A stretch of DNA of 64,000 nt from positions 39,324 to 103,323 of the forward strand of contig NIVC01001614.1 of NCBI GenBank assembly GCA_002269645.1. Direction: 5' to 3'. The DNA is from Macrostomum lignano. Lineage: Eukaryota. The translations under genes were made by a program, and so were the position numbers. Positions 38,363 to 62,849 of the stretch are shown here, in pieces. Within the stretch, counting starts at the first letter, position 1. Each line of letters begins with the position of its first letter. The notes under the pieces were generated by a model, which was given only the letters and a program-made list of their open reading frames with translations, did not search any database and was not told the origin of the DNA.

Positions 38363-40750
38363 TCAGTCGGTCGAGTCCACCTCTCGTCTTCGGCGTCTTG
38401 TCAGGCCCATCAGCTTGAATAGGTGGCTTCTCTGGCGCCGGTGACCCTGCTGCTGTTTTTGTTGCTGCTGCTGCTGCTGCCGCTTTCTGCTTGTGGCGGC
38501 GCTCAAATTGTCGGCTGCCGCCAGATCGACGCAAGTCAGAGTGGCCATAGACGGATTTGAAGTGTCACAATCGGCCTCGCTTATATCCGTCAGGCTCTGT
38601 CGCAGGCTGGAGTCAATTTGGCCTAGCAGTTGGTCGCAAGTTCGAATCCTATTAACAGTCAGGTTGGCCAGCTCCGAGGTTGTTAGAATCGATCGAATCC
38701 GATCGAGTTGAGTCAGGCAGCTCTGTTGGATTTGTCGAATTTCAATCAAATCGTTACCTGGCTGATCCTCAAGTGTCAAAGGAGACAGCGGGGCAACTCC
38801 GCTGCAGGTGAAAAATGCCGAGTCCATTGAGGCTGCCGTGTCCTTGCAGTTGGATTGAGTTTCCACTGTGCTATTGGAGAGATCCGGAGACTGATCAATG
38901 ATTGCTGCTTGCTGGTTCGAGTTCGCCTGTTGGTCAAGCAGCAACTGCCAGGCTAGGGAGGCGTCTGTTGATGAGGCTGCTTAGGGATGGGGCGGATATG
39001 GGAGTAATGAGTTACCAACGATAGAACCAAGTTGTCCTTTAGGGGCGTAGCCATAAGGAGCGGAGCAAGTGATGGTGCACCTTAAAATTAAAAACCCTAT
39101 GGCTTGGGCAGGCATAAACGACAATTGCCATGCGCTTGATCCCCCGCCCCACCTTGAGGCCTGTTATGGAAATCAATAATTTTGCTTCCGCGGGCGCCAA
39201 AACGATCCAGTGCCGGCGGCGTTAAAATCGAGTGTCTGTGGCGCCAAAATGATCGAGTGCCAGTGGCGCCAAAACGATCCAGTGCCGGCGGCGTTAAAAT
39301 CGAGTGTCTGTGGCGCCAAAATGATCGAGTGCCTGTGGCGCCAAACTGATCGAGTGCCTGCGGCGTTGAAATACATGTAAGTGCCAGTGGCGCCAAAATG
39401 ATCCAGTACCTGCGGCGCTAAAATGATCGAGTGCCTGCGGCGTTAAAATGATCGAGTGCCTGCGGCGCCAAAACGATCGAGTGCCTGTGGCGCCAAACTG
39501 ATCCAGTGCCTGTGACGCCAAAACGATCGAGTGCCTGCGGTGCCAAAACGATCGAGTGCCTGCGGTGCCAAAACGATCGAGTGCCTGTGACGCCAAAACG
39601 ATCGAGTGCCTGTGACGCCAAAACGATCGAGTGCCTGTGGCGCCAAAACGATCGAGTGCCTGCGGCGTTGAAAAAAGTGCCAGTGGCGCCAAAATGATCC
39701 AGTGCCTGCGGCGCTAAAATGATCGAGTGCCAGTGGCGCCAAAACGAGTGCCTGCGGTGCCAAAATGAGGGCAAACACCACCGATTCCCAAAAATAATAT
39801 GTAGAAATTTAGTCGTGTAATGCGCTCGTAAAATTCTCGGCTTCGTCCCGCACCATAAAATCGATTGCGACATCCTTGGACATGTATGTCATGTACCGAT
39901 CCTTACTGCAGAAGCTTTGGCACCCCTAAGTGCTTGCCATGCAGTTTCCATTGTACATATCATAGCCCATTCAAATGAAGGGTCTTCCCCCAGCTGACTC
40001 ACGCAAATCCCAAGTCTCAGTAGCTGTTGTCTCCTCCAGCTGCTGCTGTTGCACCGACTGATTCAACCGACGCCGATGCAGTGGTCGCTGCTGCTGAAGT
40101 CGGGCCGGTTTCCTACTGCTGGCCTTGCCACAGGCGCGCTTTTGAGCTTGATGATGCAGCAACAGTTGAGGCCTTCGACTGGGCGAATCCAGGTCAGTCT
40201 TGGCCGCGCTCTTCGTCGACAGAACCATCGGCACCGCCCGCTTAGCAGCCAGGATTGTCGCTTCTGCTCTACAGTAGCAACAGACGCTGTAGCTTATCGC
40301 GGACACAATGTCCTTTTCCGTTAGCTCATCCGATGATGTAGCCAACTCTGCTAGATTGTCATCCACAAACACTCGCTGAGTTGAGTAGCTCAACATCCGA
40401 CTCTCCTGATTGGCCAGATCCACTCGGCAGGCAGCAACGGGAAAGCCGAAATGCCTGACTGGCGACAGAGGTGCTCGCTCGTCCCAGCTGCTGGTGAACT
40501 CCTGCAAACTGTGGTAGGTCAGCTGACTCGACAGCGACTGACCTGCCGTCGTTGATGCCACCATAGCAGCATTGACGACATGTCCTGAGCACAGCTGCTG
40601 CGCCACAGAGTCGCACAGATGAGGCAATAGCTGACGCCGATTCAGCGTTAACTGATGGCGTCTTTTCGACCTGATGAATCCGAAACGGCGCTTCCCCGTG
40701 TTGCCGCGTACATGATGAAGCAGACAAGCGGAACCAACGATGCTTTTCAT
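38363..40750 (-). CDS. Hypothetical protein, 2 exons, about 453 aa
   Basis: Exon 1 is 40750-40003 (donor C|GTGAGT, phase 1). Exon 2 is 38976 (or 38979)-38363 (acceptor CCCTAAGCAG|CC). Splicing joins two track ORFs in frame. The sequence looks coding (Q runs, basic C-terminus), but I recognise no family. Confidence 0.6.
39190..39765. repeat. Degenerate 25-bp minisatellite (GGCGCCAAAACGATCGAGTGCCTGT)
   Basis: Directly visible; intron of the hypothetical gene. Confidence 0.9.
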
Positions 40751-41179
40751 TGTATTGAGGCGCGGTTGAAAAACTATGATTTGTTTATCAGCATATTCAA
40801 CACCAATTAAATTTGTAAAGTGGAAGCTGATAGGTGCAAACCATATGTTTTCATATACACGTAATATAAAAAAGAATGTTAAATTTCCATGAGCTCTGTA
40901 TCTAATTCTAGTTTTATCTTATTTAATCATCAATACACAGCTTCTGAGCACAATTCTAACGAAAGTGTACCATAGACATGGAAGTTCTGCATCATTAACG
41001 TACTAAAGTCTTTTTATGATCTGTTAGGCCATAAAGTCAATATTTGATTTCGCACACAGCCACAATTCACTCAGTGCAACAGAGAATATTCAGCTTGTCT
41101 CCTTGCTTCCCAAGCAGTACCTAAGTACATGTAGCATCATCGCCATCAATTATGAAATAAAATCATCCGACTACTCTAG

Positions 41180-41530
41180 ACCGCTCTCCTAACTGCTCTC
41201 TCATTGGCTGAGCTAGATTGGGCCTGCCCCTCTGGACTGAGTTTCGTCCTTCTAACTTTGACCTCTCTCCTAACTGCTCTCTCATTGGCTGAGCTAGATT
41301 GGGCCTGCCCCTCTGGACTGAGTTTCGTCCTTCTAACTTTGACCTCTCTCCTAACTGCTCTCTCATTGGCTGAGCTAGATTGGGCCTGCCCCTCTGGACT
41401 GAGTTTCGTCCTTCTAACTTTGACCTCTCTCCTAACTGCTCTCTCATTGGCTGAGCTAGATTGGGCCTGCCTGAGTTTCGTCCGTGTAACATCGACCTGT
41501 CTCTTTACTGCTCTCTTATTGGCTGAGCTC
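41180..41530. repeat. 81-bp minisatellite x about 4, each unit with a CCAAT box on the minus strand
   Basis: Directly visible; related to the array at 55945-56275. Confidence 0.92.
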
Positions 41531-41972
41531 AAACCGGCAAAATTTAAAACAGTAAAATCAAAACAGGTTTCTTTATTAATTCCAGTTGGAAGTAAAATTC
41601 AAACCGCGAGCAATTATTACGGATGTAAATTTGTTTATTTAAATGCGCAATCGTATATAAGATTCAAAAACATTCAGTAGACTACCGAGGAATAACCAAG
41701 AATCGCTAAAGTTACTATTTAATCAGAATCAGAGATACTAAAATAATTACTAGTTATTTTACTATCCGTGGTGTGCACAGACGTTTCTTTCGTAGCAACT
41801 TTTTCAGGGCTACGTGAGGGATTTTACGATTCAAATCTTTATTCGTCTACTTTTCTCAGTAGTCTAAATTGAATCTCCCACAGTGAGCTAAGATACATTC
41901 TTTATCTGAGCGTTCAAATAAATCCTGATAAAACAGTAACTTCCAGTAGTCCTTCGTGCTAACATTGAATAG

Positions 41973-42788
41973 TCATCTGAGGAAGGCAACCTCCAAGATG
42001 CTGACCTCAATATCTTTGGACTCCTTAAGATGATGGTTGTACGATCTGTTTAGATTATATCGCAGATTAGCAACCTGACTGACGCTATAGTCGCGACCTT
42101 CCACCATAGCGCTAGCAACGTCATCGCTGCTCATCAGCTTCCGAGCGCAGGCCTGCCTCGCGCGATGCATCACAAATGGCATTGTGGCAGTTTTGTGCAA
42201 CGAGAACACTAACCCACAAGAAGCGGCAATACCGGCTTCTAAAAAAGCAATATCAATTCCTTTCGATGATGTTGACTGTCCTGCTTTCTTGTTCCTCCTA
42301 TTACTATTGCTTTTGTGACTGAGTTTCGCGTCGCTGTAAGTGCCAAACGGTGGATTGGTCACAACCACATCGAACTGTCTTTGATGAACCAGTCCAGCCG
42401 ACAGGCGAGTCACATCCGCCTGCAGCAGATCCCAGTTCGCTGATACGTCATTATCATCATCATCATTGCCAGGTGAAAACAGCTCCATCAAGTTGGAGCG
42501 GCAGAGGTCAAGCGAGTCGCTGTCAATATCGACTCCGCACACGTAACCGGAGCCCAAAGCCAGACAGCCGGTCATGAGGGCGCCGGGACCGCAGCCCAGA
42601 TCCAATACGGACTGCTCGGCAGTGAAGCAATTCCAGCGCATCTTGGCATCGTACAGCCAGCTGGCAGCCACCTCGCCAGGCGTGGCGTATTGCTCCCAAC
42701 GCGATTGAGGATTAGCAAATGTTGGCACCTGTTGCAGCAGCGATTCTAACTGTTTCCGATTGCGAACCAGAGGCTGTACAGGGGCCAT
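41973..42788 (-). CDS. METTL5: 18S rRNA N6-adenosine methyltransferase METTL5, intronless
   Basis: LESLLQQV..F..P...EQY.T, SAM motif VLDLGCGPG, NPPFG, GID.AFL, VFSLHK..T, LRYNL..SY.HH...S.DIEV. True ATG at 42788 (the track used TTG). Confidence 0.93.
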   Translation of the reverse strand: MAPVQPLVRNRKQLESLLQQVPTFANPQSRWEQYATPGEVAASWLYDAKMRWNCFTAEQSVLDLGCGPGALMTGCLALGSGYVCGVDIDSDSLDLCRSNLMELFSPGNDDDDNDVSANWDLLQADVTRLSAGLVHQRQFDVVVTNPPFGTYSDAKLSHKSNSNRRNKKAGQSTSSKGIDIAFLEAGIAASCGLVFSLHKTATMPFVMHRARQACARKLMSSDDVASAMVEGRDYSVSQVANLRYNLNRSYNHHLKESKDIEVSILEVAFLR

Positions 42789-42844
42789 GCAGCGAGCCGA
42801 CAAGTTTTAAGATAATCTAGGTTAATTAGAAACATTATTGCTGA

Positions 42845-43445
42845 GACGAGATGCGAGACTGGGGAGTGATTTAGTGAGAGGAGATCTGAGGCTGAGACTG
42901 ATATGAGAGACTTGGCGAAAAGAGATCTAAAACTGAGATGAGAGATTTAGTGAGAGGACATCTGAAACTCAAATGTGAGATTTGGTGAGAAGAGATTTGA
43001 GAATGAGATGTGAGACTTGGCGAGAAGACATCTGAAACTGAGACGAGAGATTTAGTGAGAGGAGATCTGAGATTTAGATGAGAGATTTAGTGAGAGATGT
43101 GAGAATTGGTGAGAAGAGATCTGAAACTGAGATGAGAGACTTGGCGAGAAGAGATCTGAGATTGAGATGAGAGATTTGGTGAGATGAGATCTGAGATTGA
43201 GATGAGAGATTTGGTGAGATGAGATCTGAGACGTGAGACTTGGCGAGAAGAGATCTGAAACTCAGATGAGAGATTTGATAAGAGGAAATGAAACTCAGAT
43301 GAGAGATTTGATGAGAAGAGATCTGAAACTCAGATGAGAGATTTGATGAGAAGAGATCTGAAACTAAGATAAGAGATTTGGTGAGAATAGATCAGAGACT
43401 GAGATGAGAGATTTGGTGAGAAGAGATCTGAAAGTGAGAAGATAT
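42845..43445. repeat. Degenerate GA-rich minisatellite of about 33-35 bp (GAGATGAGAGATTTGGTGAGAAGAGATCTGAAACT)
   Basis: Directly visible. Confidence 0.85.
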
Positions 43446-43789
43446 CTGGCAAGACGAGTTTTGATTTTTAAAATCAAAAAGACAGTTGATTCTCTATCGA
43501 AATTTTGTTAAATTGATTTCAAACAAACATTTCAATAATACAGTAATTAAGTAGTATATTTAGAACATCATACTCAAACACAAGTTTTAGCAGCCACTTT
43601 TGATAAGAATTTAATTTATTAATGTACTTTTATGCGATTTTTCAAGTTAGCAATTTTTCATAAGCAAATCATTATCCTCAAGTAAAGTACAGGAAATGCA
43701 TTTGCGAAGCACGATTCATATGGACAGGCAAATACGATGTTTAAATACAATAATGATTGCATGTAGAAAATTTACATACTCTTAATCAT

Positions 43790-44785
43790 AGGAGCTTCGC
43801 AGATTGTTGAGAGTTCTAAGAGTTCGTAGAGAGCCACATTTATGGAAGATGACACAGGCACATTTAAGGAAGAAGTAGCTTTTAGATCGTAAGGAGCTAC
43901 ATCTGTAAAATAGAATATGTGCTGAAAAAATCGTATATCCTTATAAGGGAGTCAAATTTGTGGAAGAGAGTACATTTAAGAGACTGTAGAGAGCCAAATT
44001 TTCGGAAGATGACATGTTTCAAGAAATTGTAGGGAGCCACATCTGTAAAAGATTATTTGTGCTAAAAATCGAAGAAAAGCACATCTGTGGAAGAGAATAT
44101 ATTCTAAGAGAGAGCGTAGAGAGCCACATTTTCGGAAAGAGGACATGTTCTAAGAAATCGTAGGGAGCCACATCTTTAAGACGACACGCGCTAAGAAATC
44201 GTAGGGAGCCACATCTTTAAGACGACACGCGCTAAGAAATCGTAGGGAGCCACATCTGTAAGAGGACACGCGCTAAGAAATCGTAGGGAGCCACATCTGT
44301 AAGAGGACACGCGCTAAGAAATCGTAGGGAGCCACATCTTTAAGACGACACGCGCTAAGAAATCGTAGGGAGCCACATCTTTAAGACGACACGCGCTAAG
44401 AAATCGTAGGGAGCCACATCTGTAAGAGGACACGCGCTAAGAAATCGTAGGGAGCCACATCTGTAAGAGGACACGCGCTAAGAAATCGTAGGGAGCCACA
44501 TCTGTAAGAGGACACGCGCTAAAAATCGTAGGGAGCCACATCTGTAAGAGGACACGCGCTAAAAATCGTAGGGAGCCACATCTGTAAGAGGACACGCGCT
44601 AAAAATCGTAGGGAGCCACATCTGTAAGAGGACACGCGCTAAAAATCGTAGGGAGCCACATCTGTAAGAGGACACGCGCTAAGAAATCGTAGGGAGCCAC
44701 ATCTGTAAGAGGACACGCGCTAAAAATCGTAGGGAGCCACATCTGTAAGAGGACACGCGCTAAGAAATCGTAGGGAGCCACATTT
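43790..44785. repeat. 41-bp minisatellite (GTAGGGAGCCACATCTGTAAGAGGACACGCGCTAAGAAATC); homogeneous at 44150-44785, diverged copies to the left
   Basis: Directly visible. Confidence 0.93.
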
Positions 44786-44921: not shown

Positions 44922-45395
44922 TTAGTAGCGTCGATAGGACTTGCTAGCGGATCCACTGGAATTGTCTCCGTTATTCCTATCGAAATGACGACTGTCTCGT
45001 TTAACACCGGCGGCAATATTTCTCGACGGTTCGTTGCGTTGATAATAATCGCCGTCTCGACTGTCGCCTCTGTGGTTGCCATGGTAACGCTGGCGCTGCT
45101 GATGCCGCCGACCCTCGCTAGTCCAGTCGTACTGCCGCCGGGGATTCCGGTACCAGCGGGTCACCACGGGGGGTGTTGGCGATTTCTCGCGATTCCAACA
45201 GGCCTGAAAGTCCGGATCCTGCTCGGTGAACCGGTGCTGGAATTTCATCTCTAATTGGAGGACGCTGAGACCGCCGGATGGCGGAGCTGCGGCTGCTGCG
45301 GTTGACTGCTCAACAGCTGTCTTAGAAGACTCTGCTGCCTCTGCTGTTGCCTGAGATGAACTTTTCTCAGCTGCAGCTTCTTCTGGCATTTTCAT
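44922..45395 (-). CDS. RAMAC: RNA guanine-7 methyltransferase activating subunit (RAM/FAM103A1)-like, intronless
   Basis: LEMKFQHRFTEQDPDFQACWNREKSPTPPVVTRW resembles the RAM domain (FEEMFASRFTENDKEY...PPIVEEW); R/N/D/Y-rich disordered tail; ATG at 45395. Confidence 0.75.
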   Translation of the reverse strand: MKMPEEAAAEKSSSQATAEAAESSKTAVEQSTAAAAAPPSGGLSVLQLEMKFQHRFTEQDPDFQACWNREKSPTPPVVTRWYRNPRRQYDWTSEGRRHQQRQRYHGNHRGDSRDGDYYQRNEPSRNIAAGVKRDSRHFDRNNGDNSSGSASKSYRRY

Positions 45396-45814
45396 GAATA
45401 AATGAGTTGATTGCTTTATTAGGCCAGCCAAGTTGGTCTAGCGCTTCAAGTTAAGCAGAGCTGGCCGCGGTTAGTGCGCAGCTTAACTATCGAAAATTTG
45501 ACTGCCTAAACTAACGCTTAACCTAAACTCTAACTTATTGAATAAAACCTATCCTGTATCTAAACTATATCATAAAACTAAACTAAACCGAATCTTAAAC
45601 CCTAATCTAAACCTTTAATCTGGGGGTCGGCCAATTTCGGCCCACGAAGCCTCTCTATCCCGCCTCGGGTCCTTTGAAACTTCACAATAGCAATCCGGCC
45701 CGCTCAAGGTTTGTGTCTCTTCTCAGCTCTCTTCTCTCGTCTCTTTTTTCTTTTCTCCGTTCTCTTCTCCCTGCACAGCCTGTGATAGCATGTCAGCGGA
45801 ATGGGCCTCCAATA

Positions 45815-46990
45815 GACAAGGGCGCCCACCTACGAGACAGGGGCACCCACCTAGGAGACAGGGGCGCCCACCTAGGAGACAGGGGCACCCACCTAGGAGA
45901 CAGGGGCGCCCACCTAGGAGACAGGGGCGCCCACCTAGGAGACAGGGGCGCCCACTAAGAGACAGGGGCAACCACCAAAGAAGACAGGGGCGCCCACCTA
46001 GGAGACAGGGGCGCCCACCTAGGAGACAGGGGCGCCCACCTAGGAGACAGGGGCGCCCACCTAGGAGACAGGGGCGCCCACCTAGGAGACAGGGGCGCCC
46101 ACCTAGGAGACAGGGGCGCCCACCTAGGAGACAGGGGCACCCACTTAGGAGACAGGGGCGCCCACTAAGAGACAGGGGCAACAACCAAAGAAGACAGGGG
46201 CGCCCACCTAGGAGACAGGGGCACCCACCTAGGACAGGGGCACCCACTTAGGAGACAGGGGCGCCCACTAAGAGACAGGGGCACCCACCCAGGAGACAGG
46301 GGCGCCCACCTAGGAGACAGGGGCGCCCACCTAGGAGACAGGGGCACCCACCCAGGAGACAGGAGCGCCCACCCAGGAGACAGGAGCGCCCACCCAGGAG
46401 ACAGGAGCGCCCACCAAGGAGACAGGGGCGCCCACTAAGAGACAGGGGCACCCACCAAAGAGACAGGGGCAACCACCAAAGAAGACAGGGGCGCCCACCT
46501 AGGAGACAGGGGCACCCACCTAGGAGACAGGGGCGCCCACCTATAGGAGACTGGGGCGCCCACCTAGGAGACAGGGGTACCCACCTAGGAGACAGGGGCG
46601 CCCACCTATAGGAGACAGGGGCGCCCACCTAGGAGACAGGGGCACCCACCAAGGAGACAGGGGCACCCACCAAGGAGACAGGGGCGCCCACTAAGAGACA
46701 GGGGCACCCACCAAAGAGACAGGGGCACCCACCAAGGAGACAGGGGCGCCCACTAAGAGACAGGGGCACCCACCAAGGAGACAGGGGCGCCCACTAAGAG
46801 ACAGGGGCACCCACCAAAGAGACAGGGGCGCCCACTAAGAGACAGGGGCACCCACCAAAGAGACAGGGGCGCCCACTAAGAGACAGGGGCGCCCACCAAG
46901 AAACAGAGAAGAAACAGAGGCACCCACCAAAAGATAGGGGCGTCCATTTAAAAGACATGGGCGCCCACCTAGGAGACAGGGGCACCCACA
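45815..46990. repeat. 21-bp GC-rich minisatellite (GGAGACAGGGGCGCCCACCTA), about 55 copies
   Basis: Directly visible. Confidence 0.95.
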
Positions 46991-49568: not shown

Positions 49569-50269
49569 GATTGCGTGTCCGATAGAGTTTGCACTGAGCA
49601 TGAAAAAAATAAAGAAATTGTTTTTATCGATACTACTTACTATGATCGCTTAAGTCAGTAGTATAAAACTAACTGAAAAAGAAAGAAATTTAGAAAAAAA
49701 TACAAAAAAACAAGAAGCTACGGGTTAATTCTATTCTGTTGAAACTGAACTTTTAATTTTAAACTTGTTTTATATAAAAATAGCAGCATGGTGATTTTTG
49801 ATAAAATGTTTACAGGGTGATCTTTTCAGTTTTAGCAGGACAAAAATAGACTGAAAATACGAGCGTACATACACTGACACGATCTATCAGATTATTATAT
49901 CAAATTAGGCAAATCTGCAAATAAAATGTTTATAGAGAAAAAATATATTCTTTTTAAAATGTGCTTATTAAAGACAGTGTTCAACTTTGAGTAGGCGATA
50001 AAGAAAATGCATAATAAAATTGTTTATCCAGACCGTATCATACTGGGCACAATAGGAATTTTGGCAATGCTTCTTACCGCTTATTGGTTGCAAACTATGA
50101 TCGAATTATAAAATCAAGTTATGCAGGACTACTGGGATGACTGAACAGAAAATACAAACTAAAAGATAACTTTAATTAGATCAAACAGACCTAAATACTA
50201 GGATTTATTGTAAGAGAAATATGCAAATCGAAAAAAAACAGTTAAAATTACTAGATTTACAGATTTTGA

Positions 50270-52670: not shown

Positions 52671-52750
52671 CACAGGCCAATTTTACATTAGGTAGTCAGT
52701 TCAAAACAGTTTTTACAATTTTGAAGTAACACTGAAAAAAAGTAAGCATC

Positions 52751-53290
52751 CTATTTTCTAGACGAAGCAACCCGATCCAAAAAGGCGGCATTTGCCTGAC
52801 GCATTTGATCACGCCGTTGTTCAGTCGATGATTGCTGCTTTGGCGGCTCCTTTGATGTCTTATCAGCTTCGCCAGACAGCGGCCTACCGCCGGACATAGA
52901 TTTAATATTTTTCGTTGCTCTCTCGTATTTAGCCAGCTTCCTACGCTTCATCTCGGCCTCTTGCTGCTCAATAAAAGACCGACGAAGACTGCCGCTTGAT
53001 GTTTCACCGCCGCCGCCGCCTAATTGATGAGTGAAAGGCGCCGGTCTATTAGCTTCTACATAGGCGGCTAACTGTTGGCTCTCCCGTTCAGCTATTTGTT
53101 GATTTAATTGTCGCCGCTCACTATTGGCTGGCAGTACGCTGTAGCTGCCCCGATATTCTAACTGCCTGCCCCCTGCCTGGCGCTGATTGGCTAATTGATC
53201 CGATTGGCTGCCGTCAGGATTGGCTGGGTTAACACCGCTGCTACGATTATTGTAAATGCCTGTTGGCTGAGCGTTGGAATCGCTGTACAT
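52751..53290 (-). CDS. EPSTI1: Epithelial-stromal interaction protein 1-like, intronless, 179 aa
   Basis: GSYSVLPANSERRQLNQQIAERESQQLAAYVEANRP....LGG resembles EPSTI1 (GAYTLIAPNINRRNEIQRIAEQEL..LEKWKEQNRAKP...LGG); C-terminal RRDQMRQANAAFLDRV; ATG at 53290. Confidence 0.7.
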   Translation of the reverse strand: MYSDSNAQPTGIYNNRSSGVNPANPDGSQSDQLANQRQAGGRQLEYRGSYSVLPANSERRQLNQQIAERESQQLAAYVEANRPAPFTHQLGGGGGETSSGSLRRSFIEQQEAEMKRRKLAKYERATKNIKSMSGGRPLSGEADKTSKEPPKQQSSTEQRRDQMRQANAAFLDRVASSRK

Positions 53291-53984
53291 TGCTGTGTAC
53301 ACAGAAATATGTGTAAATAAATTTAAATTTAAATAAGCAAGATTAAACAAGGAGAAAAAAACAAGGTTTAGTGCTATGATCTTTTTTATTGATTTATCTA
53401 TCTATTTGTCTAACTACGTATCTATCTCTATCTATCTATCTATCTATCTATCTATTTATCCAACTATATATCCACCCATCTTTATTCCTCTTTATCTCCA
53501 TAATATACTACATGTAGCACTCTCCGGAATTCCGACAGACTAAAAAGCCAAAAAAGCATCAAGGTAAACAACAAAGCATCAAACTGCTTGTCTTCCGAAC
53601 AAAAAACTCAGATAGACAATATTGTCTGGCTGTTTATTTGTTTTATTATCGCGGTTCCCTTTTCGAGTTTTTTTTACGTTGCAGACTTATTAATTGATTT
53701 TAATTACTATATAGTTACTTGTACGCAAACACTGCGGCTACACAGCGGGGTTCGTGAATTGAGAGTTATTAATAGAGATATACTTTTTGTCTAAAAGCTA
53801 AAGGAGTCAGTTATACTTAAGATAGACAGACAGAAGAGACAGGGTATAATTGTGAGAATTAACTAAAGCAATCATCAAATGGCGACTTTTATTAGGTATT
53901 GATAAATTCTATGGCTATTATCTAGCGTATAGTTTGTATTAGAAACAATATAGTTGTCAGTCAGTTCGAATAGACGAGGCCAAC

Positions 53985-54335
53985 TCAATGGTAGCCTTCG
54001 TGCGGATAATCCAAAAATTTCAAACCCTCCTCCGTGTTCTTCATCGGCTTATGCGTCGGCACCCTAAAATAGCCGCTACCAAGCATTATAATCACGGTTG
54101 TAGCCGCCACAATTAAACCGGCGCCAAATACTTTGTTATACTTGGCGTTGAAATGAGCGTAGCCTTCGCTATATTTCATAGTGGGTTGGATAATCTCATT
54201 CATAGAGATTGACCGGGCGGCCTCGGTGTAAGAATGATAAATGCCGACGTGCTTCTCGTGATGGCCGTGATGACACAGAGCCCGACGGCTCTGCCTGGTG
54301 GCTACAAGGCTGGCCAGCTTAAGGATTCGATTCAT
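53985..54335 (-). CDS. Small mitochondrial membrane protein of the deltamethrin-resistance prag01-domain family (invertebrate COX7B-like)
   Basis: Arg-rich, acid-free presequence-like N-terminus, HHGHH, then SMNEIIQP...Y...NAKYNKVFGAG followed by one TM helix, matching my recall of the prag01/CG7630 family. Confidence 0.6.
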   Translation of the reverse strand: MNRILKLASLVATRQSRRALCHHGHHEKHVGIYHSYTEAARSISMNEIIQPTMKYSEGYAHFNAKYNKVFGAGLIVAATTVIIMLGSGYFRVPTHKPMKNTEEGLKFLDYPHEGYH

Positions 54336-54474
54336 ATTTGCTTTTTAAAGAGTTTTGGTTGACATGCATTGGTCGGGTTGCGATGGTTTTAATAACCACA
54401 GCGAATTTTATGTACAGATTTAATTTAGACCAGTTTTATAAAACATAACAAGCTTGATTTTGACTATAGATTAC

Positions 54475-54975
54475 CGCTAGATTAGACTAGACCATAGACT
54501 ATAGTGTCGCTAATATACCATAGACTAAGTGCGCCACTATACCGTAAACTATAGTGCTGCTAGACCATAGACAGTAGGGTGCCACTAGACCATAGACTCT
54601 AGTGTGCCGCTAATACCATAGACTCTAGTGTGTCGCTAATACCATAGACGCTAGTGTGCCGCTAATAACATAGATGCTAGTGTGCGGCTAATAACTTACT
54701 CTAGTGTGCCGCTAATACCATAGACTCTAGTGGGCCGCTAGACCATAGACGCTAGTGTGCCGCTAATAACATAGACTCTAGTGTGCCGCTAATACCATAG
54801 ACGCTAGTGTGCCGCTAATACCATAGACGCTAGTGTGCCGCTAATACCATAGACGCTAGTGTGCCGCTAATACCATAGACTCTAGTGGGCCGCTAGACCA
54901 TAGACTCTAGTGTGCCGCTAGACCATAGACTCTAGTGTGCCGCTAGACCATGGACTTACAGAATGCCGCTAGACT
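54475..54975. repeat. 26-bp minisatellite (GCTAATACCATAGACTCTAGTGTGCC)
   Basis: Directly visible. Confidence 0.92.
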
Positions 54976-55944
54976 AACCTTAGTGTCTACGGGCTTTAAT
55001 ATAGCTGTGTCTTGAGGTACATCTGTGTATAGATGAAAAAATAAAAAAAGTAAAAATCGGAAAAGCCATATATTAACTATTAGAACTCAAAATGAACAAT
55101 ATTAACAATGTATTTCTGACTTTAGGTTTAGCATATATGATATAAAAAATTAAAACAAAAAGAATAAATTTCGTACTACACATACTACGCATACTAAACT
55201 GGCCAATTTTTGTATTATTTAAAGCAAATTGAACATAAAAAACAGCACAGTATCTGCGGATATCAACTTCATACACATCAACACTTTTACAAGAAATCTA
55301 AGCTTTGATGAACAACAATTGCATGAACTATTATCGTGGGACAACTGAAGGTTTAGCCATTGAAAAAAACACTTACACAAAAAGGCACAATGACCTACAA
55401 TGGAACTATAATAGTATTTGTGTGCGTTTGACTGAGAGGTATGTTAAAAATTAATTCCTAGCGCATGAGTGATATATATAGTGAGTAAATATCATCAGAG
55501 TCTTATTATACTCGTATCAAAACAATCAATGAATTAAATGTCTTCACTTGGAGTATTGTATTTCTGTGCAACACAGAGAAGGCAAAAACAATGGCACTAA
55601 AAATGACAGAAAAAGGATATATTATTATATATTGTTAGGAACAGCTTACAAAACAATCGCAGAGCGTACTCACTACTGGAAGCAATGTATGAGTATATAT
55701 ATATTAAACAAAGATTCAAATTAAATATGCTGAGCATAGGTCACAGATACCGGAATAACAAGATACGTCACCCGCAAAATATGCGTTTATTTAGTTTTTT
55801 TTCTGTAGCAAAATTGGCTGTTTTCGCTTTTATAATTTTATAATAAAAAATTCTTAGATTTTGCAAGATCGAAAATTTTACGACCAAGCAAGAGAGACAA
55901 GGGATACCAGACCGATAAACAGTTTGGCTTTCCTCTTGCCCGAT

Positions 55945-56275
55945 GGTGTCTAACTTTGACCTCTCTCCTTACTGCTCTCTCATTGGCTGAGCTAAATTGG
56001 GCCTGCCCTCTAGCCAGACTGTGCTTTGTCCGTCTGATTTTGACCTCTCTCCTCACTGCTCTCTCATTGGCTGAGCTAAATTGGGCCTGCCCTCTAGCCA
56101 GACTGTGCTTTGTCCGTCTGATTTTGACCTCTCTCCTCACTGCTCTCTCATTGGCTGAGCTAAATTGGGCCTGTCCCCTAGGCTGGGTTTCGTCCGTCCA
56201 ACTTTGACTTCTCTCCTTACTGCCCTCTCACTGGCTGAGCTAGATTGGGCCTGCCCCTAGACTGAGTTTCGTCTA
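55945..56275. repeat. 84-bp minisatellite x about 4, same family as 41180-41530
   Basis: Shared core CTGCTCTCTCATTGGCTGAGCTA(G/A)ATTGGGCCTGCCC. Confidence 0.92.
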
Positions 56276-57129: not shown

Positions 57130-59298
57130 TTATTGAACTTTCTTATCCTTAACAAGGCCATTTCCGCCGTTATCGCCAGCGGTTGCTGCGGCCGAGTCTA
57201 TCCAATGCTCCATGGCGCATTTCTTTGGAAACCAGCCCCTAGAAGCGGAAGCGTCTCTCGCAGACTGAGACTGCTCATCAGCTAGTAATAGCTGACCGTA
57301 GAGCCATTCGCCGTGAGCTCGAGTTACAATCAGTCGCTGACCAGGCGACAATGACAATCGTTTCTCTTCGATCCAGATTGAGCACGGCTGGCAACAGGCG
57401 GTTCTCAAGCCGAAGCTAATAGGAAATCTGGTACCAGTGTAAGCTCGAATAACGCTCGCTAATACAGCCGTACTGGCTTTATGCGCCTTTTGCAGCACCT
57501 GCTCCTTTGTTAAATCGTATTTGCCGCAATCGGGTGCCAACGGCCAATCGTCCAGGCCGTTGCCAACTGGTCGGCCGGACCAGTTTATCACCTGCCGGGT
57601 AGGAGGGAGATGGCATCTATTCTCATAGGCGATTGTGCCTAACAGGTACATTTACATATAACTGGGGTCTAACAGGGTAACAGGTGTCTAACAGATACAT
57701 TGGTATCTAACACGTGTCTAACAGATACATTGGTATCTAACAGGTGTCTAACAGGTACATTGGTATCTAACAGGTGTCTAACAGGTACATTGGTATCTGA
57801 CAGGTGTCTAATAGATACATTGGTATCTGACAGGTGTCTAACAGATACATTGGTATCTGACAGGTGTCTAACAGATACATTGGTATCTAAAAGGTGTCTA
57901 ACAGATACATTGGTATCCAACAGGTGTCTAACAACTAACACACTTTGAGCATAACACGCGTCTGGTTTGTGTGTGTGTGTTATTTTGCGTGTTAACGTTA
58001 ACAATCCAGAAAAGTCCAACATGCAACTTAATTACCTGCTTAAAGTTTCTCATCCTACCCAAATCGTAGGGATATTGAAACTTCGGCGGCTGTCCAGCCT
58101 CATCAATGGACAAGTGAGCAGTCATGGAGTCGTGCCGGCATTCTAATCGATAATCGGCTTTATCGCAGATCCAAAACTCGATACCAGTTCGATTGCGTAA
58201 TATCGATTTTAGCTGAACAAAGAACAGAGCGCCAACTGCTATGGTGGTGCCTAAAGCGAGGCCCAGACAGAAGAATGCTAACAATACCTCCCACAGGTTC
58301 ATCATAGCGTAGTCCTCGGTCGGGAACTCAGAGTCCTGATGATAGAACGGATAGAACAGAGTATAATAGACGCAGTAGGACACAATGACAGCCGAGTGCA
58401 GGCAGCCTAACGGGGCGAACAATAGAAAATAGGTGAACTGAGCGTGATTCCGGTGACCGACGCAGGCGTTGATCCATGGACAGTGATGATCCATCTTGGT
58501 GACGCAGCGGCCGCACCTGCTGCAGTGATGCGATCTGCAAATTTTATAATTACAGGTATTCTAGTGTCGCTTTTTTATCAGCATAGGTTGCAATTGTTAT
58601 TATTTTATATATTCTCTCGAGATGAATTATATTGCAATAATCTCGTACATTATATTTTAATCCTGATCATTTCGATCATTTATAATTATTATCGTCTGGC
58701 TGGTCCCATATACTCGACTCTTACACCATTGATCATCAACATTATCATTGGCAACACCATCACTATCACTGTCATTACCAGTATCATCATCATCGAAATC
58801 ATCATTATCATCACACTTATCATCATTAAAATCATCACCCCACCATCTTCATCATCATCACCACCACCATCATCACAATCATAGTATTAATAATAATTTT
58901 CATAACTATAATACTCATGCCTTAAAATAATTTCAAAAGAAAAGTACTCAGCTTGTAAGTTAGTCAATAAACCAACGAAGGCCACTCACCTAGGAGCTTT
59001 GTATCCCTTACAGATAGAGCACCATTGCAACAAAGATTTCAGTTGTTGATCGTCTGTCAAATCGATCGGTCTCCAGCCAATAGGCACAAAACCGGGACCC
59101 AGAACATGGCCTTCAAATAGGTGGACATCACCAGGTAGTATTCAAGCGCGTATACGGCTACGTGCAGCAAATTGCTGTGCGATTTCAATGGCGGCCACCA
59201 TATTAGCAGCAGTCGACTAGTATAGATAGCTATATAGAATATGATAAATAGGGCGATTAAGGGGCCCCAGTGCAGGACCCGGCGAAGTCTCTGCTTAG
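57130..59298 (-). CDS. ZDHHC6: Palmitoyltransferase ZDHHC6 (DHHC plus C-terminal SH3), 3 exons; one apparent frameshift; no start codon found
   Basis: Exons: 59298-58990, 58534-58036, 57591-57130. Motifs: RRVLHWGP, GPGFVP.GW, C..C.GYKAPRSHHC..C.RCV.KMDHHCPWIN.CVG..N, YPYDLG..RNFKQV, SH3-like LIVTR...WLYG...RGWFPKKC. A 1-nt deficit lies at about 59102. Confidence 0.9.
57670..57935. repeat. 30-bp minisatellite (CTAACAGATACATTGGTATCTAACAGGTGT), about 9 copies
   Basis: Directly visible; ZDHHC6 intron 2. Confidence 0.92.
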
Positions 59299-59329
59299 CT
59301 GTGCGACAGGAAGAGTCCAGAAAAAGAGT

Positions 59330-59755
59330 TATGCGTGTGGAGTAGTGGCTAGTCTTTGTTGACTGTAGCTGCGTGTGGAGTAGTGGCTAGTCTTTGTTGA
59401 CTGTAGCTGCGTGTGGAGTAGTGGCTAGTCTTTGTTGACTGTAGCTGTGTGTTGGGTGGTGGCCAGTCTTTGTTGACTGTAGCTGTGTGTTGGGTGGTGG
59501 CTAGTCTTTGTTGACTGTAGCTGTGTGTTGGGTGGTGGCCAGTCTTTGTTGACTGTAGCTGTGTGTTGGGTGGTGGCCAGTCTTTGTTGACTGTAGCTGT
59601 GTGTTGGGTGGTGGCCAGTCTTTGTTGACTGTAGCTGTGTGTTGGGTGGTGGCCAGTCTTTGTTGACTGTAGCTGTGTGTTGGGTGGTGGCTAGTCTTTG
59701 TTGACTGTAGCTGTGTGTTGGGTGGTGGCCAGTCTTTGTTGACTGTAGCTGTGTA
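59330..59755. repeat. 38-bp minisatellite (GTGTGTTGGGTGGTGGCCAGTCTTTGTTGACTGTAGCT), about 11 copies
   Basis: Directly visible; just upstream of the first ZDHHC6 acceptor. Confidence 0.95.
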
Positions 59756-60724: not shown

Positions 60725-60850
60725 TTAGGTTTACAGAAGCTTACAATTTACAGAAGCTTACAGTTTATATAAGCTTACAGTTCACAGAAGCTCACAGTTT
60801 ACAGAAGCTTACAGTTTACAGAAGCTTACAGTTTACAGAAGCTTACAGAA
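60725..60850. repeat. 17-bp repeat (TTTACAGAAGCTTACAG), about 7 copies
   Basis: Directly visible. Confidence 0.85.
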
Positions 60851-60983
60851 TCAGTGCAGTAGCTTGTAAAGGAACAATACATCTAAGATTTTGCTTTTAA
60901 AGCAGAATTTGTGACCACAGTAACGAAAACAGACGGTCAACCTTTCTTGGAAATATCTTTCAGTTCTTCAGTTGGAATTTCAA

Positions 60984-62849
60984 TCACAGAGCACTAGCAC
61001 TATTAGAAGCCGATGGCGTCTTGGCACTGCTCGGATCATTCTGATTGGCTGAAGAATCCACAACTGCCGCCTCATTCTGCTGATCACTTAAGACAGCCTG
61101 TTGATCTGATGACTCAACATCGAAACGATTGTTCTCGCGATAATCATCCGGAAGCGATGTATGAAAGTATAATTTTAATTCTCTTTTAATAGCCGCGCAA
61201 AGGTAAGATGTTAGTAGGATTAGAGGAACAATGTAAAGCAAAGCTGGTTGGCCGCTGCCTGTAGCAAAGAGAACGCCGGCACAGGCGCCAAGTCCAAGCA
61301 GGTAGCCAATCATTGACGAGACAAAATAAGGATAGAAACGATTTTTCCAAGCCAAATCGAAGAACAAATTCAGACTGATTAGGATAGCCGGCATTATGAC
61401 ATCGCCGAGACCGAGAATTGAGTAGGGCAGCAGGCAGGTGGATACAGACTCAGCCGGAGGATAGGGCATGACCTTAAACACAATGGGAATAATCTCCCCG
61501 GATAAACCGGCTGTTCCCAAGGCTACGCGTTCCATAAAAGAGCCGCCACGTTCGACGTAATAATCCATAACGGTGTCACGCCTAACTCTATTCAAGGTTG
61601 AAGCCTCCGTTGACGGCGGGTTCGTTGGACTCGGGCCGCTGCCGCTGCCGCCGCCGCCGCCAGAGAATAGCGGCGTAATAAAGACAAAGAAAACGTCGTA
61701 CACTAGGAAGCATATCAGGATAATTGTAGCAATCTTGATGCGCAGAGCCATAGCCAAGGATTCAATGACGCGCAACACGAGTACAACGTTAAGAATATTA
61801 GTCAAGATGAAGGCCCAATGAGCATTGCGGAATACAAACCAGATTACGGCAACTGCCAGACAAAATGGATAAACGATAAACTCTAAATAAGTGTAAGATA
61901 TTTTTCCGCAACATTTGCCAAGATCGAATTCTACAGTAGTTGCTAGCCAAGGCCTTGGACCAGTCTCTAGTTTGGCTTTCACGCAGGCCAGATAGATTCT
62001 ATTGATATAATAGACGAGACTGCTAGACACGGAATAGCCGTAGAGCACTAGCATTAACCAAACGAAATAGTCGTAAGCAAAGTTCAATAGCAACAGTATA
62101 GTGATTGGAATGGCAAGAGCAAATAATAGTGAATATCGCTGTGTGCCACCAAGGCGCGCTAGCATTTACGTCTGGCTCATGCTCGGAGTTCGTATTCACA
62201 TTAGAGGCCAACCTTGAGCGTGTTAACAAGTATTCTTTCAATGCTGTAGCGGCTGTAATGCAAGACAGCACCATAGTGACCAATGCGATAGCATACAAAA
62301 TGAGAAACATGTACTGCTTAGAACCGGAATTGTCGTCGTCTGGCCTATAGAGAGTCGCTTTGACATTCGAATCCGACATGAACTGCGACTTAAAGGATTG
62401 GTAAGCTACCTTCGATATAACGACAGTTTGAAAGCTCTTAGGTAGAAGGTGCGACTCGGCCGTTAAATAAGTCGGATACCTTTCTGACGATACCACAATG
62501 AGACCAATGGCACCTTGAGCGAATGCGTTAACAGCCTTATCTGTATAGGTGCAACCACCCAAAGCCAGTATGACAATGCGATTAGCATAACTGGCATTGT
62601 TTCTATTACATCCGTTGTTTGGATAAGCATCGATAATTGGCTTGCTATCCGACGAGTGGAAAGTGTTGCTCAGATTAAAGGTTAACGATGGATCGCCGTA
62701 GGCGCAATAGTTCTCATAATGAGAATCCGTGGTGCCAACGCGAAGATAAGCAATACCATTGAGATTTAAATTCAAGGCTCTCGCTGTTCCGACTTCGAGT
62801 AGGAAACCAGCAGAACTACCAGCGACAACCAACTTGCTCGTTGGTTCAT
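60984..62849 (-). CDS. SPPL2: Signal peptide peptidase-like 2 (PA domain plus GxGD intramembrane aspartyl protease), intronless, two apparent frameshifts
   Basis: PA domain (IVILALGGCTYTDKAVNAFAQGAIGLIVV), catalytic LVYDVFFVFITP and LGLGD, and QPALLYIVP. ATG at 62849; frame breaks at about 62805 and 62100-62165. Confidence 0.85.

What the first reader, a model, noticed from the sequence alone, without database searches (positions are those of the whole stretch)
38363..62849. Eight consecutive co-oriented genes with acceptor sites before the ATG: candidate SL trans-spliced operon inflated by satellites
SPPL2, ZDHHC6, COX7B-like, EPSTI1, CHMP1, RAMAC, METTL5 and the unknown gene all lie on the minus strand, and five are intronless. 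Acceptor-like AGs sit 2 nt (EPSTI1, GTACACAG|CAATG), 25 nt (CHMP1, TTTTTTCATGCTCAG|), 28 nt (METTL5, CTAATTAACCTAG|) and about 23 nt (unknown gene) before the ATG, with no upstream exon visible. Spacers are 0.7-3.2 kb, and the longer ones are mostly tandem repeat. SL trans-splicing and operons are established in flatworms; that this locus is one is inference.
Basis: partly seen in the sequence, partly recalled or inferred. Interest (0 to 1): 0.75.

Follow-up and report, generated by a model that had tools for sequence, protein, structure and literature searches.

The report
Trans-spliced gene cluster in Macrostomum

Summary
The window is the last 64 kb of contig NIVC01001614.1 of the Macrostomum lignano Mlig_3_7 assembly. 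The eight minus-strand genes, their order, five intronless bodies and the 0.7-3.2 kb satellite-rich spacers are real.

The four "acceptor AGs" are not informative: 84-86% of all ATGs in the window have an AG 2-30 nt upstream, and none of the four fits the published acceptor motif.

The real junctions show up another way. Mlig_3_7 was polished with RNA-seq, so the 3' end of the spliced leader (..ATTGCATG) was written into the assembly just upstream of trans-splice sites. Paralogous copies, or proteins modelled on the older ML2 assembly, keep canonical TTCCAG/TTTCAG acceptors at the same positions for ZDHHC6, the small Deltameth_res-like gene, CHMP1 and METTL5. RAMAC carries the best leader-like match in the window. 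METTL5's "ATG" is leader-derived, so its start codon comes from the leader.

Published locus tags place SPPL2, ZDHHC6, EPSTI1 and CHMP1 in one transcriptional-unit family, and RAMAC with METTL5 in another. The cluster continues upstream (TRAPPC3, RAB3GAP1) beyond the contig end.

Verdict: trans-splicing is well supported, polycistrony in blocks is likely, and a single eight-gene operon is unproven. The phenomenon, repeat inflation included, is already published.

The parts
60984..62932 (-). SPPL2-like gene (PA domain + signal peptide peptidase), intronless. ATG at 62849, stop at 60984. Candidate trans-splice junctions are at 62932 (caatattttgaATG|TTTCATG, 11 of 14 matches to the leader 3' end) or 62925 (tttcATG|ATACC).
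   Evidence: Pfam. Paralogues encode 643-644 aa in one ORF, and their 5'-partial CDS starts at the position equivalent to 62918. Leader-suffix scan. The window copy has 1-nt indels at 62805 and 62118-62121 relative to the overlapping contig, which explains its truncated 393-aa model. Junction evidence is weak to moderate.
57130..59317 (-). ZDHHC6-like palmitoyltransferase. Exons are 59317-58990, 58534-58036 and 57591-57130. The trans-splice junction is immediately before 59317, and the start codon is supplied by the leader.
   Evidence: The window and two other copies read ctttttCTG|GAC. Paralogue contig 126 reads ctttGCATG|GAC. ML2-based UniRef models read TLFQ|DSSC, i.e. tttttCAG|GAC. The annotated 5'-partial CDS starts exactly here in three copies. 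A 1-nt deletion at 59101 truncates the window's own model to 306 aa.
53985..54362 (-). ATG at 54335. The trans-splice junction is before 54362, 27 nt upstream of the ATG.
   Evidence: The window, contig 814 and contig 4279 read ccaaTGCATG|TCAACC, while contig 126 reads ccaaTTCCAG|TCAACC. Pfam.
52751..53292 (-). EPSTI1-like gene, intronless. ATG at 53290-53288.
   Evidence: Annotated 5'-partial CDSs in three copies start 9 nt upstream, 6 nt upstream and 3 nt downstream of the A of the ATG, so the genomic 5' UTR is about 0-11 nt. All copies are identical here, so the junction cannot be resolved. A junction at 53292 would put the leader AUG out of frame as a 36-codon overlapping uORF (read).
48315..49598 (-). 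CHMP1-like gene (Snf7). The trans-splice junction is before 49598 and the leader AUG is in frame. A genomic ATG lies at 49568. Coding exons run to 49452, then 49282-49100 and 48647-48315.
   Evidence: The window reads tttttttCATG|CTCAGTGC, contig 126 reads ttttTTGCATG|CTCAGTGC, and the ML2-based model P0138 reads ILFQ|[16 protein letters not shown], i.e. TTCCAG|CTCAG. Exon model. The annotated CDS starts at 49565, right after the genomic ATG; this is unexplained.
44922..45392 (-). RAMAC-like gene (RNMT-activating mini protein), intronless. ATG at 45389. The trans-splice junction is before 45392, 3 nt upstream of the ATG, with the leader AUG in frame.
   Evidence: aACTCATTTATTCATG|AAAATG compared with the leader GACTCAATTTATTGCATG. 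This is the best leader-suffix match on either strand of the whole window (score 11.0; 99.9th percentile 6.5). The paralogues read ..TTTATTGATG|. Pfam RAM.
41973..42785 (-). METTL5-like rRNA methyltransferase, intronless. The trans-splice junction is before 42785. The 'ATG' at 42788-42786 is leader-derived, so the start codon is supplied by the leader.
   Evidence: The window and contig 126 read cgcTGCATG|GCC, while contig 814 reads cgcTTCCAG|GCC. The annotated 5'-partial CDS starts at GCC (APVQ..) in all three copies. In contig 814 no in-frame genomic ATG exists between the upstream TAA and the conserved N-terminus (read).
38363..40927 (-). Unknown gene (453 aa from the ATG at 40750). Exons run to 40003 and 38976-38363. 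The annotated 5' end is about 40917-40915. A leader-like tgTATTGATG| ends at 40928.
   Evidence: NCBI models of 453 and 508 aa. Sequence. No Pfam family. Junction evidence is weak. The gene belongs to its own transcriptional-unit family (Mlig026529).
50273..52672 (.). 38-bp satellite (about 62 copies) filling 75% of the EPSTI1->CHMP1 spacer.
   Evidence: TRF. The same spacer is only 1219 and 1282 nt in the two paralogues, against 3185 nt here.
45814..46897 (.). 21-bp satellite in the CHMP1->RAMAC spacer. Together with the (GTCT)n array at 47677-48104 it makes up 52% of that spacer.
   Evidence: TRF; spacer arithmetic.
42892..44783 (.). 35/105-bp array (42892-43439) and 41-bp array (44137-44783) in the RAMAC->METTL5 spacer, 56% of it.
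   Evidence: TRF.
54487..56260 (.). 26/52-bp array (54487-54956) and 84-bp array (55948-56260) in the ZDHHC6->next-gene spacer. The 84-bp unit belongs to the same family as the 81-bp array at 41179-41471 in the METTL5->unknown spacer.
   Evidence: TRF; self-comparison of the window.
59345..59754 (.). 38-bp array ending 28 nt upstream of the ZDHHC6 junction. Together with the 17-bp array at 60719-60848 it lies in the SPPL2->ZDHHC6 spacer.
   Evidence: TRF.

Best explanation
The locus is part of a run of at least ten co-oriented Macrostomum lignano genes: RAB3GAP1, TRAPPC3, SPPL2, ZDHHC6, a 116-aa gene, EPSTI1, CHMP1, RAMAC, METTL5 and an unknown gene. Their mRNAs receive the 35-nt spliced leader. 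The run is transcribed as polycistronic precursors at least in blocks: SPPL2 through EPSTI1/CHMP1, and RAMAC plus METTL5. Trans-splicing at a pyrimidine-CAG acceptor just upstream of each reading frame, together with upstream 3'-end formation, resolves each precursor into monocistronic mRNAs. For METTL5 and ZDHHC6 (and optionally CHMP1, RAMAC and EPSTI1) the leader's terminal AUG is in frame and acts as the initiator. Tandem-repeat arrays that vary in length between paralogous copies have expanded the spacers without moving the junctions.

Shown: gene content, gene order, and the junction positions for five genes. Inferred: co-transcription (from published transcriptional-unit names) and the number of promoters.
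For: Organism and known biology: the window matches M. lignano Mlig_3_7. [quoted passage not shown] Repeat-subtracted spacers peak near 100 bp, and the operon criterion is under 1 kb after repeat subtraction (PMC8629364).

Junctions: Mlig_3_7 was Pilon-polished with RNA-seq (PMC5730564 Methods). At METTL5 and the 116-aa gene, two or three assembly copies read TGCATG| where one paralogue reads TTCCAG|. At ZDHHC6 and CHMP1 the assembly reads CTG|, GCATG| or CATG| where ML2-based protein models encode CAG (Q). RAMAC has the top leader-suffix match of the whole window.

Controls: of the six TGCATG sites on the gene strand of the cluster, only the two at gene 5' ends differ between copies. Outside tandem repeats, clusters of three or more substitutions within 7 nt are rare, and the METTL5 (42790) and ZDHHC6 (59322) junctions are among the few found.

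Annotation: 5'-partial CDSs begin exactly at these junctions for METTL5 (3 of 3 copies) and ZDHHC6 (3 of 3).

Co-transcription: name prefixes denote clusters of transcriptional units, which were then cut into genes at SL and poly(A) signals. SPPL2 = Mlig015429g1, ZDHHC6 = g2 and EPSTI1 = g3 on one contig. SPPL2 = Mlig029636g2, EPSTI1 = g5 and CHMP1 = g6 on another. RAMAC = Mlig015112g1 and METTL5 = g2.

Spacers: 573-1952 nt remain after removing sequence repeated within the window, and this still includes the 3' UTRs. Junctions are conserved while spacer lengths differ between copies.
Against: No SL-containing reads, poly(A) sites or TSS data could be examined here. The public protein and contig collections hold no M. 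lignano RNA-seq assemblies for these genes.

Co-transcription rests on interpreting locus-tag prefixes, not on seeing a precursor. The annotation splits the run into at least five transcriptional-unit families: RAB3GAP1; TRAPPC3; SPPL2 to CHMP1; RAMAC-METTL5; and the unknown gene. The authors say such units tend to break in repeats, but the breaks could equally be real promoters.

The ZDHHC6->next-gene spacer keeps about 1.95 kb of non-repeated sequence, above the 1-kb criterion unless the 3' UTR is long.

Junction evidence is weak for SPPL2 and the unknown gene and ambiguous for EPSTI1. Annotated 5' ends scatter by about 12 nt around some inferred junctions.
Confidence: 0.72

Rival explanations
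1. One reading: exactly these eight genes form one operon driven by a single promoter upstream of SPPL2, with trans-splicing at the AGs 2, 25, 28 and about 23 nt before the ATGs.
For: Same-strand run with no intervening opposite-strand gene. Trans-splicing is real at most genes. Most repeat-subtracted spacers are compatible with the published operon criterion.
Against: The AG sites are chance-level (84-86% of ATGs have one). They differ from the junctions marked by leader imprints and paralogues: METTL5 is at 42785, not 42816, and CHMP1 is at 49598, not 49593. TRAPPC3 and RAB3GAP1 lie upstream on the same strand, and TRAPPC3 carries aATTTGCATG| 27 nt before its ATG. So SPPL2 is not evidently the first cistron. 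Published transcriptional units split the eight genes into three families.
Confidence: 0.12
2. A cluster of independently transcribed genes: each has its own promoter and outron and is trans-spliced as a monocistronic transcript, and the shared orientation is historical.
For: About 60% of trans-spliced M. lignano genes are not assigned to operons. Spacers are 0.7-3.2 kb, far above the roughly 100-bp mode. 570-1950 nt of non-repeated DNA per spacer could hold promoters. Several transcriptional-unit families exist.
Against: Non-homologous neighbours share transcriptional-unit name prefixes on two independent paralogous contigs. This is expected only if RNA-seq coverage joined them into one unit before cutting. 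Older ML2-based models fuse RAB3GAP1 and TRAPPC3 into one 1269-aa protein, which is typical of read-through precursors.
Confidence: 0.2
3. The leader-like sequences are genuine genomic relics: the intronless genes are retrocopies of trans-spliced mRNAs that kept part of the leader.
For: Five genes are intronless. RAMAC carries 15-17 nt of leader-like sequence with 1-nt indels in all three copies.
Against: At METTL5 and the 116-aa gene a paralogue has a canonical TTCCAG acceptor at the identical position, differing by three substitutions in otherwise identical flanks. ZDHHC6 and CHMP1 show the same imprint and have introns. ML2-based models encode CAG at those sites. The assembly was polished with RNA-seq, which predicts exactly this artefact.
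Confidence: 0.04
4. Nothing special: a chance run of same-strand genes with conventional capped mRNAs and no trans-splicing.
For: A run of eight same-strand genes is not vanishingly rare.
Against: Leader imprints and canonical acceptors lie at the 5' ends. In one copy METTL5 has no genomic start codon. 5'-partial CDSs start at these sites.
Confidence: 0.02

Closest known systems
Macrostomum lignano SL trans-spliced operons / transcriptional units (Wudarski et al. 2017, PMC5730564; Ustyantsev & Berezikov 2021, PMC8629364)
   Same: Same organism, same 35-nt leader and same acceptor type (TTCCAG/TTTCAG fits [T/C]TNCAG). Same-strand neighbours were cut from shared transcriptional units. Spacers are inflated by simple repeats, exactly as those authors describe. 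Genes are mostly conserved housekeeping types, as they report for trans-spliced genes.
   Different: Nothing in kind. The run (9 genes from TRAPPC3, 10 from RAB3GAP1) is at or above the reported maximum operon size of nine. Whether it counts as one operon under their rule could not be checked, because no operon list is available.
Caenorhabditis elegans operons (SL2-type)
   Same: Polycistronic precursor, downstream cistrons resolved by trans-splicing coupled to upstream 3'-end formation, 2-8 genes, housekeeping bias (established knowledge; summarised).
   Different: M. lignano has a single leader with no SL1/SL2 specialisation. Spacers here are 0.7-3.2 kb rather than about 100 nt. The leader ends in AUG and can supply the start codon.
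Flatworm spliced-leader 3'-terminal AUG used as initiator (Cheng et al. 2006, as cited in PMC12582326; noted for Macrostomum in PMC10468722)
   Same: For METTL5 and ZDHHC6 the junction is in frame with the ORF, and no genomic ATG precedes the conserved N-terminus. The leader AUG must therefore initiate.
   Different: Not tested experimentally here. For CHMP1 and RAMAC a genomic ATG follows in frame 11 and 2 codons later, so either could be used.
Chimeric gene models from polycistronic precursors in parasitic flatworms (PMC12582326)
   Same: The UniRef 1267/1269-aa model fusing RAB3GAP1 and TRAPPC3 resembles the chimeric models those authors treat as operon evidence, with intergenic distances of up to several kb.
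   Different: Those are parasitic species analysed with a 300-bp criterion. This is a free-living macrostomid with much larger repeat-filled spacers.

Membership tests
SL trans-spliced operon (metazoan; M. lignano criteria of PMC8629364) | The organism performs spliced-leader trans-splicing | tested here: met
   The window is M. lignano Mlig_3_7. The leader and its prevalence are documented.
SL trans-spliced operon (metazoan; M. lignano criteria of PMC8629364) | Adjacent genes on the same strand, not interrupted by an opposite-strand transcript | tested here: met
   The NCBI gene calls in three or four copies are all co-oriented. Caveat: non-coding transcripts were filtered out of the deposited annotation. 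Two exact ATTGCATG 8-mers lie on the opposite strand in spacers; they are identical between copies and have no ORF.
SL trans-spliced operon (metazoan; M. lignano criteria of PMC8629364) | Downstream genes are SL trans-spliced at an acceptor just upstream of the ORF | tested here: met
   The test is indirect but specific. It uses the leader imprint against a canonical acceptor in paralogues or in ML2 for ZDHHC6, the 116-aa gene, CHMP1 and METTL5, plus the top leader-like hit at RAMAC. EPSTI1, SPPL2 and the unknown gene are weaker.
SL trans-spliced operon (metazoan; M. lignano criteria of PMC8629364) | Repeat-adjusted intergenic distance under 1 kb between gene end and next gene start | tested here: inconclusive
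   From stop codon to next junction, minus sequence repeated within the window: 1109, 1952, 573, 747, 1310, 674 and 690 nt. Poly(A) sites are unknown, so 3' UTR length cannot be subtracted. Four pairs pass outright, two pass if the UTR is 110-310 nt or longer, and one needs about 950 nt or more.
SL trans-spliced operon (metazoan; M. lignano criteria of PMC8629364) | Genes are co-transcribed as one precursor from one promoter | tested here: inconclusive
   Shared transcriptional-unit name prefixes imply joint units for SPPL2-ZDHHC6-EPSTI1(-CHMP1) and for RAMAC-METTL5. The run spans at least five unit families. No TSS, nascent-RNA or long-read data are available here.
SL trans-spliced operon (metazoan; M. 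lignano criteria of PMC8629364) | 3'-end formation (poly(A) site) of the upstream cistron shortly before the downstream junction | not testable with these tools
   Only hexamer positions could be listed. Examples: AATAAA 28 nt before the RAMAC junction and 103 nt before the EPSTI1 junction, and ATTAAA 31 and 62 nt before the 116-aa gene junction. Such hexamers are common in AT-rich DNA.
Leader-donated initiator AUG | The leader ends in AUG, the junction is in frame with the ORF, and no genomic in-frame ATG precedes the conserved N-terminus | tested here: met
   METTL5 on contig 814 reads TAA..TTG TCG GCT CGC TTC CAG|GCC CCT.., and the annotated protein starts APVQ. ZDHHC6 reads ..TTT CAG|GAC TCT.., and its protein starts DSSC. 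Use of the leader AUG in translation is inferred, not measured.

The most novel reading that the evidence does not exclude
The whole run from RAB3GAP1 (or TRAPPC3) to the unknown gene is one precursor of nine or ten cistrons and roughly 35-45 kb that carries kilobase-scale satellite arrays. It would equal or exceed the largest operons reported for M. lignano (nine genes). It would also show that a polymerase and the trans-splicing machinery tolerate multi-kb satellites inside intercistronic regions whose length differs 2.5-fold between paralogous copies.
Probability: 0.12. Interest if true: 0.45.

Novelty: already known. Interest (0 to 1): 0.25.

Why it matters
As biology the locus is a textbook example of something already published for this species: trans-spliced, repeat-inflated operons of conserved housekeeping genes.

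Its practical value is a caution. In the Mlig_3_7 reference, RNA-seq polishing overwrote the last 2-17 nt of outrons with the spliced-leader 3' end. This erases AG acceptors and creates start codons that are not in the genome.

It may also partly explain why only 44% of annotated trans-splice sites showed the [T/C]TNCAG motif in the 2021 study; this is speculation. Conversely, the imprint is a usable in-assembly marker of trans-splice junctions.

Tried and rejected
1. Rfam scan of the window found no family, and so no SL RNA gene. No 15-mer of the leader occurs in the window.

2. Looking for RNA-seq (Logan) contigs bearing the leader found nothing. Exact look-ups of the ATG-started and 5'-extended EPSTI1 proteins were not on record. 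The 90% clusters of METTL5, EPSTI1, RAMAC, CHMP1, ZDHHC6 and TRAPPC3 contain only NCBI or UniRef members. No transcript-level evidence was therefore reachable, and I ran no further search on it.

3. Supplementary tables of three M. lignano papers hold none of the locus tags and no operon list. The 2015 ML2 genome paper is not held.

4. I first assumed L001 was the window itself. It is a paralogue at 94-97% identity, which turned out to be useful.

5. I considered that every 5'-partial CDS start marks an exact trans-splice site. I rejected this as a general rule, because EPSTI1, SPPL2 and the unknown gene have starts that scatter by up to about 12-21 nt between identical copies. Also, the CHMP1 CDS starts after an ATG that is also present in ML2.

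6. The retrogene-relic reading of the leader-like sequences was rejected for four genes (see rivals).

7. Poly(A) hexamer positions were listed but judged too unspecific to define cistron ends.

Full report
WHAT THE SEQUENCE IS.
The METTL5-like ORF (41973-42803, minus strand) is 100% identical over 98% of its length to a Macrostomum lignano protein of assembly GCA_002269645.1 (Mlig_3_7). Exact-sequence look-ups show three to four copies of the locus in that assembly. The window is the last 64 kb of contig NIVC01001614.1 (103,323 bp); window position equals record position minus 39,323, so base 64000 is the contig end. Two paralogous copies lie on NIVC01000126.1 ('126') and NIVC01000814.1 ('814'), with 3.4% and 1.6% substitutions over the aligned sequence, repeats included. 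The start of NIVC01004279.1 ('4279') overlaps the window end over 11.3 kb with one substitution and 32 one-base indels. It is therefore the same locus left unmerged.

CHECKING THE OBSERVATION.
Pfam confirms SPPL2 (PA + Peptidase_A22B), a DHHC palmitoyltransferase, RAM (RAMAC) and a METTL5-type methyltransferase. The deposited annotation adds Snf7 (CHMP1) and EPSTI1. The 'COX7B-like' 116-aa protein has only a sub-threshold PF16020 (Deltameth_res) match. All eight genes are on the minus strand, and the next gene downstream (ankyrin repeats, 28363-36539, plus strand) is convergent. Five genes are intronless. ZDHHC6 and CHMP1 have two introns and the unknown gene has one. Spacers are 697-3185 nt and carry 11-75% tandem repeat.

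However, 84-86% of all ATGs in the window have an AG 2-30 nt upstream. None of the four fits the published acceptor motif [T/C]TNCAG. So the gene-level observation is confirmed, while the 'acceptor' observation carries no information.

WHAT IS ALREADY KNOWN.
M. lignano has a single 35-nt leader, CGGTCTCTTACTGCGAAGACTCAATTTATTGCATG. About 30% of its genes are trans-spliced and 15% are assigned to operons. Operon size reaches nine genes. The authors state that repeats contribute substantially to intergenic distances in operons, and they use a repeat-subtracted threshold of 1 kb (PMC8629364). The 2017 genome paper assembled 'transcriptional units' from RNA-seq and found that about 7% are multi-gene precursors. 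It cut these into genes at SL-read peaks and poly(A) sites, and name prefixes denote clusters of similar transcriptional units (PMC5730564).

FINDING THE REAL JUNCTIONS.
No RNA-seq reads or transcript contigs of this species were reachable. The decisive clue came from comparing the 5' ends of the genes between copies.

- METTL5: the window and 126 read cgcTGCATG|GCC, whereas 814 reads cgcTTCCAG|GCC.
- The 116-aa gene: the window, 814 and 4279 read aaTGCATG|TCAACC, whereas 126 reads aaTTCCAG|TCAACC.

In both cases three substitutions within 7 nt, in otherwise identical flanks, convert a canonical acceptor into the last six bases of the leader. The genome paper states that the assembly was polished with Pilon using Illumina DNA and RNA-seq mapped by STAR. 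Reads carrying a short leader overhang would impose exactly this change where RNA coverage outweighs DNA coverage. I infer that mechanism; the pattern itself is observed.

Two controls support it. First, of the six TGCATG sites on the gene strand of the cluster (6.7 expected by chance), only the two at gene 5' ends differ between copies. Second, outside tandem repeats, clusters of three or more substitutions within 7 nt are rare, and the METTL5 and ZDHHC6 junctions are among the few found.

Independent confirmation comes from UniRef proteins modelled on the older ML2 assembly.
- ZDHHC6 starts TLFQ|DSSC, so the codon is CAG where Mlig_3_7 has CTG or GCATG.
- CHMP1 starts ILFQ|[16 protein letters not shown], so the codon is CAG where Mlig_3_7 has ATG.
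Both had been predicted from the imprint model before I looked.

An unbiased scan of both strands of the window for 3'-anchored leader matches puts the RAMAC site first. It reads aACTCATTTATTCATG|AAAATG with score 11.0, against a 99.9th percentile of 6.5.

INFERRED JUNCTIONS (first exon base, window coordinates).
- ZDHHC6: 59317.
- 116-aa gene: 54362.
- CHMP1: 49598.
- RAMAC: 45392.
- METTL5: 42785.
- EPSTI1: 53287 or 53292. All copies are identical, and the annotated 5' ends lie between 11 nt upstream and 3 nt downstream of the A of the ATG.
- SPPL2: 62932 or 62925 (leader-like 11 of 14, and TTTCATG|).
- Unknown gene: 40927 (TATTGATG|) or 40917 (after an AG, matching the annotated 5' end).
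The last three are weak to moderate.

For METTL5 and ZDHHC6 the deposited 5'-partial CDSs start exactly at the junction in every copy.

METTL5's 'ATG' is leader-derived. In copy 814 there is no in-frame genomic ATG between an upstream TAA and the conserved N-terminus, so the leader's AUG must initiate. The same holds for ZDHHC6.

A terminal AUG that can act as initiator is a known flatworm feature (PMC12582326; PMC10468722).

OPERON OR NOT.
Evidence for co-transcription is indirect. Non-homologous neighbours share transcriptional-unit prefixes on independent contigs:
- Mlig015429 g1/g2/g3 = SPPL2/ZDHHC6/EPSTI1 on 126.
- Mlig029636 g2/g5/g6 = SPPL2/EPSTI1/CHMP1 on 814.
- Mlig015112 g1/g2 = RAMAC/METTL5 on 126.

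The unknown gene (Mlig026529), TRAPPC3 (Mlig032831) and RAB3GAP1 (Mlig018442/020287) have their own families. The authors note that units break in repeat-rich operon spacers, so the breaks do not prove separate promoters, but they do not exclude them either.

After removing sequence repeated within the window, the spacers (3' UTRs included) are 1109, 1952, 573, 747, 1310, 674 and 690 nt. Four pairs meet the 1-kb rule outright. Junction positions are conserved while spacer lengths vary between copies; EPSTI1->CHMP1 is 3185 nt here against 1219 and 1282 nt.

Upstream of SPPL2, on the overlapping contig and both paralogues, lie TRAPPC3 (with aATTTGCATG| 27 nt before its ATG) and RAB3GAP1 on the same strand. 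On contig 814 the 10 kb upstream of RAB3GAP1 contain no annotated gene. Older models fuse RAB3GAP1 and TRAPPC3 into one 1269-aa protein, as expected from read-through precursors.

VERDICT.
- Trans-splicing of most of the eight genes is well supported.
- Polycistronic transcription in at least two blocks is likely.
- Nothing here differs in kind from the published description of M. lignano operons, so novelty is low.
- The most useful by-product is the demonstration that Mlig_3_7 carries leader imprints that erase acceptors and create false ATGs.

Noticed in passing
window 42786-42791, 54363-54368, 59318-59319, 49599-49602, 45393-45409 (and paralogous loci L003-L009): The Mlig_3_7 assembly carries the 3' end of the spliced leader written over the last 2-17 nt of outrons, probably from RNA-seq-based Pilon polishing. 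This destroys AG acceptors and creates ATGs that are absent from paralogues or from ML2-based models. It may affect motif statistics and gene models genome-wide.
   Followed up: yes
window 52700-64000 vs L007 (NIVC01004279.1): The window end and the start of another contig are the same locus (11.3 kb, 1 substitution, 32 one-base indels). Indels at 62805 and 62118-62121 break SPPL2 (393-aa model), and one at 59101 breaks ZDHHC6 exon 1 (306-aa model). These look like contig-end consensus errors, not pseudogenes.
   Followed up: yes
window 13664-13801, minus strand: There is another leader-like imprint, AAATTTATTGCTG|AAAGGC, ending at 13789. It is the second-best leader match in the window. An ATG follows at 13736 and a GT donor near 13664. 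The 1.9-kb (TATC)n array at 11530-13446 would lie in its intron. It is probably the first exon of a further trans-spliced minus-strand gene.
   Followed up: partly
window 55318-55325 and 43756-43763, plus strand: Two exact 8-nt leader suffixes (ATTGCATG) lie on the opposite strand inside the ZDHHC6->next-gene and RAMAC->METTL5 spacers. They are identical in all copies and no ORF follows. About 0.4 are expected by chance. They could be chance, or junctions of antisense non-coding transcripts, which would matter for the operon call.
   Followed up: partly
window 49565-49570: The deposited CHMP1 CDS (209 aa, 5'-partial) begins at CCT, directly after a genomic ATG that is also an M in the ML2-based model, although the supported junction is 33 nt upstream. 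This may be a second acceptor overwritten in all copies, or an annotation quirk. It remains unexplained.
   Followed up: partly
L005-L007 (upstream of the window's contig end): UniRef holds 1267- and 1269-aa 'Rab3 GTPase-activating protein' models that equal RAB3GAP1 (1091 aa) plus TRAPPC3 (178 aa). This is a chimeric model of two adjacent cistrons.
   Followed up: partly
window 41179-41471 and 55948-56260: The same 81-84-bp repeat family forms short arrays in two different spacers of the cluster, which suggests a dispersed element rather than local slippage only.
   Followed up: no
window 50273-52672 vs L004/L006: The 38-bp satellite between EPSTI1 and CHMP1 spans 2.4 kb here. The whole spacer is only 1.2-1.3 kb in the two paralogues, so array length changes quickly between duplicated copies.
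   Followed up: partly
window 1-215, minus strand: A short-period satellite with units such as AATGACTCAATTATTTAATG resembles the leader segment GACTCAATTTATT and scores among the top leader-like hits. This is probably coincidence.
   Followed up: no
window 25655-31514: A 5.9-kb, 45-bp satellite (about 130 copies, 98% matches) overlaps the span of the annotated ankyrin-repeat gene that converges on the cluster.
   Followed up: no
L003 16641-16868; L004; L006: Annotation differs between copies. RAMAC is 75 aa on contig 126 (premature stop after ..SPTPPW) against 155 aa in the window, and it is not annotated on 814. CHMP1 is not annotated on 126 although its sequence is present.
   Followed up: no
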